Below are positions 11,282-11,838 of a stretch of 38,983 bases of DNA, in pieces. Location: NCBI RefSeq assembly GCF_001194135.2, contig NC_068984.1:78753896-78792878 (forward strand), given 5' to 3'. Position 1 is the first letter of the stretch. Each line of letters opens with the position of its first letter. Position numbers and translations under genes: made by a program. The notes beneath the pieces were generated by a model, which saw only the letters and a list, made by a program, of their open reading frames with translations, was not told the origin of the DNA and did no database searches. Source of the DNA: Octopus bimaculoides. Taxonomy: Eukaryota.

Positions 11282-11836
11282 AGAGGTCGCAAAAGTGACA
11301 GAGGCTACTGACTAGCACCACTTTTGCTAGAGATAAGAGTTAAAATAACTCAAAGGCCACAAAATCAGTCTTAATGACTTTTGAGTTATTTTAACACTTA
11401 CCTTTAGTAAGAGCAGTGCTAGTCAGTACCTGTATCACTTTTGTGACCTCTATTAATTTTACCTTTAGGTTCTAATTGTTAATAAGTCACTCCTCTTAAT
11501 TTGTTGTTTACACTTTTAGCGTTTTGAAAATCAGCACATGTTTGCAACGGTTTTTTCTTATAAAAGTGACAGAAGTAGCTGAGTTTAACCCTAGGCGTTA
11601 AGGGCCGCTGATGAGAATTAAGATGGTCTACATCAAAATCCGAAATCACGATCCGGTTATGTACGCTGGGGACTTACCTTCCTTTGTCAGTCATTAAGAC
11701 AATGATTTTGTGGCTTTTATTTTAACTTTTATCTTTAGAAAAAGCGGTGCTAGTCCAGTACCCTCTGTCACTTTTGTAACCTTTATTAATTTTGCCTTTA
11801 GGTTCTAATTGCTAATAAGCCACCGTTTTTAATTTG

Positions 11837-11838
<2 letters not shown>
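11282..11838 (+). mobile_element. Penelope pseudo-LTR/retrozyme-like short element: ~331-nt unit repeated ~1.4x with an inverted 5' segment
   Basis: Direct repeat 11386-11505 / 11717-11838; 11282-11378 is the inverted copy of ~11690-11783; contains HHR at 11603. Confidence 0.7.
11603..11658 (+). ncRNA. Minimal type-I hammerhead ribozyme, apparently near intact
   Basis: GGCCG CTGATGA GAATT-AA-GATG-GTCTA-CATC-AA-AATCC GAAA T CACG A TC CGGTT: stem I 5 bp (2 G-U), stem II with one A.C mismatch, AUC cleavage site at 11653. Confidence 0.78.

What the first reader, a model, noticed from the sequence alone, without database searches (positions are those of the whole stretch)
11282..11838. ~331-nt partial tandem unit with an apparently near-intact HHR and an inverted 5' segment
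Seen: direct repeat 11386-11505 / 11717-11838 (period ~331). Segment 11282-11378 is the reverse complement of ~11690-11783 and forms a ~170-bp hairpin (11282-11451, ~72-bp arms). The HHR at 11603-11658 has a 5-bp stem I (GGCCG/CGGTT), canonical core and AUC site, with one A.C mismatch in stem II. Established: partial tandem plus inverted 5' copy is the hallmark insertion structure of Penelope-like elements. Inference: a non-autonomous, ORF-less PLE derivative whose tandem arrays would be cut into ~331-nt monomers able to circularise.
Basis: partly seen in the sequence, partly recalled or inferred. Interest (0 to 1): 0.85.

Follow-up and report, generated by a model that had tools for sequence, protein, structure and literature searches.

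The report
Decayed hammerhead-ribozyme retroelement copy in octopus DNA
This is most likely an old, dead copy of a small non-coding mobile element that carries a self-cleaving hammerhead RNA motif; such elements are already known in many animals, and this copy can neither cut itself into unit lengths nor form RNA circles.

Summary
The repeat anatomy is real. There are 1.37 head-to-tail units of about 331 nt (11380-11838), preceded by an inverted copy (11282-11379) that forms a very stable 77-bp-arm hairpin. The element lies between a (GA)n and an (AC)n microsatellite. A type I hammerhead motif with every core nucleotide sits at 11603-11658, with cleavage predicted after C11653, on the same strand as the tandem. 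It is the only such motif in the window.

The motif is weak by model-based tests. Rfam gives 17.2 bits against a threshold of 52. A model I built from four validated animal retrozyme hammerheads gives 9.4 bits, E=1.6. Helix II is long and imperfect. The three repeat copies are only 85-88% alike, so the insertion is old.

The locus holds one ribozyme, so it cannot release a 331-nt monomer or circle. Copy number could not be tested: I found no relative in the window, in about 180 kb of octopus-related DNA, or in the metagenome, viral and protein collections.

Best reading (about 0.6): a fossil insertion of a metazoan non-LTR retrozyme or Penelope-associated hammerhead repeat, which is a known class. 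Interest is low to moderate.

The parts
11262..11281 (.). (GA)n microsatellite abutting the 5' end. The element's first bases, AGAGG at 11282-86, overlap the repeat motif, giving microhomology at the junction.
   Evidence: Sequence read. In the alignment, homology of the inverted copy to D1 and D2 ends at GACCTCT/AGAGGTC.
11282..11379 (-). Inverted 5' copy. It is the reverse complement of the last ~28 nt of the unit plus the first ~67 nt of the next unit (equivalent to 11689-11782). It forms the left arm and the loop of the hairpin.
   Evidence: It shares a 5-nt TTGAG indel with the adjacent direct copy but not with the second copy.
11282..11451 (.). Hairpin of about 170 nt, with arms 11282-11359 and 11375-11451 and loop 11360-11374. 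I read it as a snap-back (fold-back) duplication at the 5' end of the insertion.
   Evidence: RNA fold -96.2 kcal/mol with z = -16; the opposite strand gives -95.2. Sub-threshold Rfam miRNA-precursor hits reflect the generic hairpin.
11380..11716 (+). Its longest stop-to-stop frame is 64 codons, and that frame lies on the minus strand (11482-11673).
11589..11671 (+). Candidate type I hammerhead ribozyme including extended stem I. The outer helix is 11589-98 with 11663-71, the internal loop is 11599-602 with 11659-62, and the inner stem I is 11603-07 with 11654-58. The core is CUGAUGA at 11608-14. Helix II is 11615-41, GAAA is 11642-45 and helix III is 11645-52. Predicted cleavage is after C11653.
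11717..11838 (+). Second, partial unit (the first 122 nt of the unit). It ends before a second ribozyme would occur.
11839..11933 (.). (AC)n microsatellite abutting the 3' end. The unit has ACAC at the equivalent point (11510-13), which suggests microhomology at the priming site. Alternatively the microsatellite is a retroposon-type tail.

Best explanation
The locus is an old, inactive insertion of a small, AT-rich, non-coding retroelement with a unit of about 331 nt. The element carries a type I hammerhead ribozyme on its sense strand. That places it in the class published as metazoan non-LTR retrozymes, or Penelope-like-element (PLE) associated hammerhead repeats. The host is an octopus.

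What the sequence shows:
- 1.37 tandem units, an inverted 5' copy that forms a hairpin, and microsatellites at both junctions.
- A complete hammerhead core in the sense orientation.
- About 12-15% divergence between the three internal copies.

How it probably arose (inferred):
- A multimeric or circular RNA of the element was reverse-transcribed at a nick in a (GA)n/(CA)n compound microsatellite. Priming used ACAC/(GT)n microhomology.
- The cDNA ran for 1.37 units. It then turned back on itself at a small intrinsic hairpin near the unit's 3' end and copied about 95 nt of its own strand.
- That end was joined to the upstream target through AGAG microhomology.
- This architecture is the one the literature describes for insertions made by PLE reverse transcriptase and endonuclease.

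What the locus can do now (inferred):
- In active family members with at least two units, the ribozymes would cut the transcript into unit-length RNAs that host ligases circularise.
- This copy has one decayed ribozyme. At most it could cut a read-through transcript once, after C11653.
- It cannot produce a monomer or a circle.
For: - Repeat anatomy is confirmed.
- The only full-core hammerhead motif in 39 kb lies inside this 557-nt structure, on the strand whose 5' end carries the inverted copy and whose 3' end abuts the microsatellite.
- The strict descriptor hits 2 of 300 shuffled windows.
- The motif fits the published consensus CUGANGA / GAAAY / RUH.
- Stem I has the inner helix, internal loop and outer helix layout of Rfam HH9, which is the best hit in the hammerhead clan.
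- Helix III, AUCACGAU, is one substitution from an 8-nt palindrome. Validated retrozyme ribozymes have ACAGUACUGU, ACGCGCGU, ACACGUGU and ACAUGU.
- Unit length and composition (331 nt, 37% GC) match the mussel retrozyme Mg353 (353 nt, 37% GC) and the 150-450 bp, under 50% GC range given in PMC7229834.
- There is no LTR and no sizeable ORF.
- The three copies of the repeated segment are about equally distant from each other (85-88%, star-like). This fits one event followed by decay.
- The inverted copy shares an indel with the adjacent direct copy, as snap-back copying predicts.
- PLE insertions are described as partial tandems with an adjacent inverted 5'-truncated copy and a microsatellite bias (PMC8557442).
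- Cephalopod genomes hold PLEs, and 235 Rfam Hammerhead_1 hits are reported in the giant squid (PMC6962438).
Against: - Rfam gives only 17.2 bits against a gathering score of 52. The E-value is 0.045 on 121 nt and 0.26 on 701 nt, and nothing passes at window scale.
- A covariance model built from four validated retrozyme hammerheads scores the site 9.4 bits, E=1.6, rank 3. A non-ribozyme site at 395-436 scores higher.
- Helix II spans 27 nt with three mismatches, against 13-14 nt in the validated examples. The inner stem I is 5 bp against 6 bp.
- The hammerhead-competent secondary structure is 8 kcal/mol above the minimum free energy fold.
- The monomer is no more structured than shuffled sequence (z = -0.09), whereas retrozyme circles are described as highly self-paired.
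- No second copy was found anywhere I could search, so a multi-copy family is not shown.
- The ribozyme lies outside the duplicated part of this copy.
- Tandem and head-to-head inverted arrangements also occur for SINE-like and LINE-like elements in this window, so the architecture is not specific to PLEs.
Confidence: 0.6

Rival explanations
1. The hammerhead motif is a chance match. Under this reading, the structure is a local DNA rearrangement of otherwise ordinary sequence, or an unrelated repeat. A replication template-switch event with microhomology at microsatellites could produce a tandem duplication plus an inverted duplication.
For: - The motif is below threshold in Rfam and in my own model.
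- The loose descriptor hits 28 of 300 shuffled windows.
- No other copy of the element was found.
- Both junctions show only microhomology and there is no clear target-site duplication.
- A comparable model score arises by chance at 395-436.
Against: - A chance full-core motif would have to fall inside one 557-nt structure, in the sense orientation, and within a unit of typical retrozyme size and composition. From the shuffles, that is roughly 1e-4 to 1e-3 per such structure.
- Helix III is near-palindromic and stem I has the type I internal-loop layout.
- Type I hammerheads in animals are characteristically found in just such repeats (PMC7229834).
Confidence: 0.25
2. The element and its ribozyme are real, but it was mobilised by a LINE rather than a PLE. 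Under this reading, the (AC)n is the retroposon's own 3' tail and the 5' inversion comes from LINE-type template switching.
For: - A LINE-like element in the same window has the same head-to-head inverted topology (arms 23695-24208 and 24813-25356).
- SINE-like units occur as tandem pairs in this window and in the O. vulgaris loci.
- PMC7229834 leaves LINEs open as possible mobilisers.
- No PLE coding sequence is in the window.
Against: - The inverted arm duplicates the same region as the start of the direct copy (snap-back). In classical L1 twin priming (from my own knowledge), it would instead be the region upstream of it.
- Retrozyme consensus sequences match PLE pseudo-LTRs in Xenopus, and the two co-occur across species (preprint 10.64898/2026.07.22.740005).
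Confidence: 0.1
3. The element is a DNA transposon of the MITE or foldback type. Under this reading, its terminal inverted repeats are 11282-11379 and 11689-11785.
For: The two arms are about 84% complementary and lie near the two ends. There are also sub-threshold hits to MITE-derived miRNA families such as mir-548.
Against: - Homology between the internal direct copy and the right-hand copy continues 54 nt beyond the outer end of the supposed right terminal repeat (11452-11505 vs 11785-11838). This fits a tandem, not a transposon terminus.
- No target-site duplication flanks 11282 and 11785.
Confidence: 0.04

Closest known systems
Metazoan non-LTR retrozymes (Cervera & de la Pena 2020, PMC7229834)
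   Same: - The ribozyme is a type I hammerhead on the sense strand.
- The unit is 331 nt, within the published 150-450 bp range, and 37% GC.
- There are no LTR, PBS or PPT features and no ORF.
- The units are arranged head to tail.
- Helix III is short and near-palindromic.
   Different: - This locus has only 1.37 units with one ribozyme.
- Helix II is twice the usual length and imperfect.
- Family copy number and circular RNA are unknown.
- There is no sequence similarity to the coral, mussel or axolotl elements beyond the core.
Penelope-like elements and their pseudo-LTR hammerheads (Cervera & de la Pena 2014, PMC4209133; Craig et al. 2021, PMC8557442)
   Same: The locus has a partial tandem, an inverted 5'-truncated copy directly upstream, insertion at microsatellites and a type I hammerhead.
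   Different: - There is no reverse transcriptase or GIY-YIG ORF.
- The ribozyme is not in the duplicated part of this copy.
- PLE ribozymes are usually minimal variants.
- Homology to an autonomous PLE is untested.
Hammerhead-bearing satellite or SINE-like repeats of newts and Schistosoma (about 330-335 nt). The newt ~330-bp repeat is cited in PMC7229834; Sm-alpha is from my own knowledge (Ferbeyre et al. 1998).
   Same: The unit length is about 330 nt, the ribozyme is a type I hammerhead with a weak helix III, and the repeat is non-coding.
   Different: Those families are high-copy with proven cleavage. Here neither copy number nor activity is known.
Rfam Hammerhead_HH9 (RF02275), clan CL00010
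   Same: The core is shared, and stem I has the same layout of an inner helix, an internal loop and an outer helix.
   Different: The score is 17.2 bits against a threshold of 52, with a long insertion in helix II. HH9 is a conserved single-copy motif in amniotes, not a repeat.

Membership tests
Hammerhead ribozyme, type I | Conserved core: C3-U4-G5-A6-N7-G8-A9, G12-A13-A14, the A15.1-U16.1 pair, and H17 not G | tested here: met
   CUGAUGA at 11608-14, GAAA at 11642-45, U11652 and C11653. This fits CUGANGA / GAAAY / RUH.
Hammerhead ribozyme, type I | Three helices around the core, with helix I open and a G10.1-C11.1 pair | tested here: met
   Helix I is 5 bp plus a 9-bp outer helix. Helix II has 8 pairs out of 11 positions, including G11615-C11641. 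Helix III is 2-3 bp. Helices II and III are weak.
Hammerhead ribozyme, type I | Score at or above Rfam's gathering threshold, or a significant match to a model of validated examples | tested here: not met
   HH9 gives 17.2 bits against 52. My own model R1 gives 9.4 bits, E=1.6.
Hammerhead ribozyme, type I | Tertiary contact between loop 1 and loop 2 | tested here: inconclusive
   Both helix I and helix II have an internal loop after 5 positions. The archetypal loop nucleotides are not recognisable.
Hammerhead ribozyme, type I | Self-cleavage | not testable with these tools
   This needs in vitro transcription.
Metazoan non-LTR retrozyme | Tandem repeat of at least two units, each with a ribozyme | tested here: not met
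   This locus has 1.37 units and one ribozyme. The family elsewhere is unknown.
Metazoan non-LTR retrozyme | Unit of 150-450 bp, GC below 50%, no LTR, PBS or PPT, and no ORF | tested here: met
   The unit is 331 nt and 37% GC, and the longest stop-to-stop frame is 64 codons.
Metazoan non-LTR retrozyme | Multi-copy family in the genome | not testable with these tools
   There is no copy in the window, in 149 kb of O. vulgaris, in 30 kb of a relative, or in the metagenome, viral or protein collections. No whole octopus genome is searchable here.
Metazoan non-LTR retrozyme | Expressed as linear and circular unit-length RNA | not testable with these tools
   No transcriptome data are available.
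Penelope-like element (insertion signature) | Partial tandem with an adjacent inverted 5'-truncated copy | tested here: met
   the definition is from PMC8557442. The signature is not exclusive, because a LINE-like pair at 23695-25356 has the same topology.
Penelope-like element (insertion signature) | Insertion into microsatellite sequence | tested here: met
   (GA)n lies at 11262-81 and (AC)n at 11839-933.
Penelope-like element (autonomous) | ORF with a PLE-type reverse transcriptase and a GIY-YIG endonuclease | tested here: not met
   There is no sizeable ORF in the element and no such domain in the ten window ORF fragments I scanned. At most the element is a non-autonomous derivative.
Penelope-like element (non-autonomous derivative) | Sequence homology to the terminal repeat of an autonomous PLE in the same genome | not testable with these tools
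   No PLE from this species could be retrieved.

The most novel reading that the evidence does not exclude
This fossil may preserve both junctions of a retrozyme integration event. The features are 3' priming on a microsatellite by ACAC microhomology, more than one unit copied from a multimeric or circular template, and a snap-back at an intrinsic hairpin that gave the inverted 5' copy. Together these would be direct structural evidence that hammerhead retrozymes are integrated by PLE-type target-primed reverse transcription. So far that link rests mainly on co-occurrence and pseudo-LTR similarity. The ribozyme would also belong to a cephalopod variant in which a long helix II with an internal loop replaces the usual loop-loop contact.
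Probability: 0.2. Interest if true: 0.45.

Novelty: new member of a known kind. Interest (0 to 1): 0.27.

Why it matters
If the family is confirmed, it adds cephalopods to the animals known to carry hammerhead retrozymes. It also offers a clean junction-level example for working out how these elements integrate. The 77-bp-arm hairpin is a potential double-stranded RNA source if the locus is transcribed. None of this changes current understanding. The element class, its ribozyme, its circular RNA life cycle and its suspected dependence on Penelope-like elements are all published.

Tried and rejected
1. **Rfam.** The whole window at gathering thresholds gave nothing. The region at permissive thresholds gave only sub-threshold HH9 and generic hairpin/miRNA hits.
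2. **Other copies in the window.** blastn with word size 7 found none.
3. **Protein database used as a translated-DNA search.** The element's longest frame (64 aa) had no candidate.
4. **Pattern scans.** I scanned JGI metagenome contigs and IMG/VR with a hammerhead pattern and with a block conserved in both direct copies. There were no matches except L001, which is a 31-nt chance match.
5. **Fetching host DNA through transposon proteins.** A LINE-tail query gave at best 53% identity and no cephalopod-named hits, so it yielded no octopus DNA. A second transposon protein led to six Octopus vulgaris loci (149 kb) and two contigs of a more distant species (30 kb). None has a copy of the element.
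6. **Exact look-up of a window ORF.** It is not on record.
7. **Covariance model from four validated retrozyme hammerheads.** The candidate is not significant, and there were no convincing hits in the octopus loci.
8. **Comparison with published retrozyme sequences.** There is no similarity beyond the core.
9. **Monomer fold.** It is not more stable than shuffles.
10. **Strand asymmetry of the hairpin.** There is none.
11. **MITE reading.** Rejected, because direct-repeat homology runs past the supposed terminus.
12. **Assembly artefact.** Rejected, because the three copies differ by 12-15%.
13. **Literature search by SINE sequence string to name the species.** It returned only irrelevant hits.
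14. **tRNA scan.** No tRNA genes were found.

Full report
**Context**

The window is eukaryotic. It has seven runs of N, dense microsatellites and about 34% GC. Transposon families in it match Octopus vulgaris chromosomes (GCA_951406725.2) at 84-92% DNA identity, and a transposon-derived ORF at 36193-36822 has O. vulgaris homologues at 71-77% protein identity. The source is therefore an octopus, though not necessarily O. vulgaris.

**Observation**

- The direct repeat 11386-11505 / 11717-11838 is 84.4% identical over 122 nt, with a period of 331-333.
- Positions 11284-11379 are the reverse complement of 11689-11782, at 83.8% over 99 nt.
- Together with 11375-11451, the inverted copy forms a hairpin with arms of about 77 nt and a 15-nt loop. 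Its RNA fold energy is -96.2 kcal/mol with z = -16. The opposite strand folds equally well, so nothing points to selection on one strand's RNA.

A three-way alignment adds three points.
- The inverted copy spans the junction between the end of one unit and the start of the next. The template therefore had units joined head to tail, or was circular.
- The inverted copy shares a 5-nt indel with the adjacent direct copy but not with the second one.
- Homology between the two direct copies runs 54 nt beyond the outer end of the inverted-repeat arm. This rules out a transposon with terminal inverted repeats.

In the 68 columns shared by all three copies, pairwise identities are 85%, 85% and 88%, with private changes in each copy. 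This fits one event followed by a long neutral decay, and it excludes an assembly duplication.

**The ribozyme candidate**

The sequence 11603-11658 reads GGCCG-CUGAUGA-[27-nt helix II]-GAAA-UCACGAU-C|CGGUU. All core positions are canonical, and the site is A-U-C with cleavage after C11653.
- **Stem I.** It extends through a 4x4 internal loop into a 9-bp outer helix, 11589-98 with 11663-71. This is the layout of Rfam HH9.
- **Helix II.** It has G-C, A.C, three pairs, an AA/AA internal loop, four pairs and a 5-nt loop.
- **Helix III.** AUCACGAU is one substitution from an 8-nt palindrome. The validated coral, mussel and axolotl retrozyme ribozymes have palindromic helices III of 6-10 nt.

A descriptor search finds only this site in the window. 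It hits 2 of 300 dinucleotide shuffles in its strict form and 28 of 300 in its loose form.

Four results count against the candidate.
- Rfam gives 17.2 bits against a threshold of 52.
- A covariance model that I built from four experimentally validated retrozyme hammerheads scores the site 9.4 bits, E=1.6, rank 3. A site at 395-436 that lacks C3 scores higher.
- The catalytically competent secondary structure lies 8 kcal/mol above the minimum free energy fold.
- The monomer as a whole is no more structured than shuffled sequence.

With about 6-8% decay per copy, three or four substitutions are expected in a 56-nt ribozyme. The mismatches in helices II and III fit that expectation, but they cannot be assigned without a family consensus.

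**Junctions and mechanism**

The 5' end abuts (GA)n, and the element's first bases are AGAGG. The 3' end abuts (AC)47, and the unit has ACAC at the equivalent position. No target-site duplication can be discerned.

I infer the following sequence of events.
1. Reverse transcription was target-primed at a compound microsatellite using microhomology.
2. The cDNA was extended over 1.37 units of a multimeric or circular template.
3. The cDNA snapped back near a small intrinsic hairpin and copied part of its own strand.
4. The resulting end was joined to the upstream target by microhomology.

The literature describes exactly this combination for Penelope-like elements: a partial tandem, an adjacent inverted 5'-truncated copy and a microsatellite bias (PMC8557442).

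The signature is not exclusive in this window, however. A LINE-like element at 23695-25356 has the same head-to-head topology, and SINE-like units occur as tandem pairs.

**What this locus can do**

There is one ribozyme in 1.37 units, and the second unit stops about 95 nt before a second ribozyme would begin. The locus cannot release a unit-length RNA and so cannot make a circle.

**Family-level test**

This is the decisive test, and I could not perform it. No copy exists in any of the following:
- the window;
- 149 kb of O. vulgaris;
- 30 kb of a more distant relative;
- JGI metagenome or IMG/VR pattern scans;
- the protein collection searched with the element's longest frame.

No whole octopus genome is searchable with these tools. 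Zero hits in 149 kb excludes only extreme abundance.

**Comparison with known systems**

The reading matches the published class of metazoan non-LTR retrozymes (PMC7229834). [quoted passage not shown] Cephalopods are known to carry PLEs, and the giant squid genome has 235 Rfam Hammerhead_1 hits (PMC6962438, PMC8557442).

Membership is partial.
- **Met:** the unit's size, composition and lack of coding capacity; the ribozyme core and its orientation.
- **Not met at this locus:** the criteria of at least two ribozyme-bearing units and of a model-level score.
- **Untestable here:** copy number, expression and homology to a PLE.

**Verdict**

The main rival, at about 0.25, is a chance motif in an unrelated local rearrangement or repeat. 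If the family is real, the finding is a new member of a known kind, and interest is low to moderate.

Noticed in passing
window 23695-25356: There is a head-to-head inverted pair of LINE-like 3' parts. The arms are 23695-24208 and 24813-25356, 88-89% complementary, with a spacer of about 604 nt. The sequences carry weak zf-RVT tails. The topology is the same as in the hammerhead element: an inverted truncated copy next to a longer direct copy, with the 3' ends pointing outward.
   Followed up: partly
window 21065-21512 and 37957-38392; L004 15028-16187; L005 4058-4661; L006 3623-4223 and 6810-7446: A SINE-like unit occurs as tandem pairs or short arrays with different periods (279, 217 and 184 nt), both in the window and in Octopus vulgaris loci. 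ARAGORN finds no tRNA gene in the window.
   Followed up: partly
L006 8764-8844 (minus strand); homologous copy at L002 18880-19080: An O. vulgaris repeat carries a full-core hammerhead-like motif. It has a long, well-paired helix II, a perfect palindromic helix III (ACAUAUGU) and a stem I with an internal loop. It lies in a ~494-nt stretch between (TA)n microsatellites. The L002 copy keeps GAAAC-ACAUGUGU-C but has lost the CUGAUGA box. The repeat shows no significant similarity to the window element, and Rfam does not call it.
   Followed up: partly
window 395-436 (minus strand): This is the best hit of my retrozyme-hammerhead model (15.4 bits, E=0.028). It reads UUGAUGAG...GAAAC, with U in place of the essential C3, has a poor stem I and lies in no repeat context. 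I take it as a near-miss or a decayed motif.
   Followed up: partly
window 36193-36822 (minus strand): This 209-aa ORF belongs to an uncharacterised transposon-like protein family with no Pfam domain. Homologues are found in O. vulgaris (71-77% identity), beetles and crabs, and in contigs labelled as archaeal MAGs, which is probably host contamination.
   Followed up: partly
window 1034-1956 (minus strand): Frameshifted remnants of a mariner-type transposase were recognised by eye from the translated fragments.
   Followed up: no
window 31648-31732 and 32408-32492: An 85-nt direct repeat is 92% identical at a spacing of 760 nt. Each copy lies next to (TATG)n-type microsatellites.
   Followed up: no
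window 10926-10954 and 11839-11933: A (CA)n run directly follows the N gap about 330 nt upstream of the element, and another abuts its 3' end. I did not resolve whether 10955-11261 belongs to the same insertion event.
   Followed up: no
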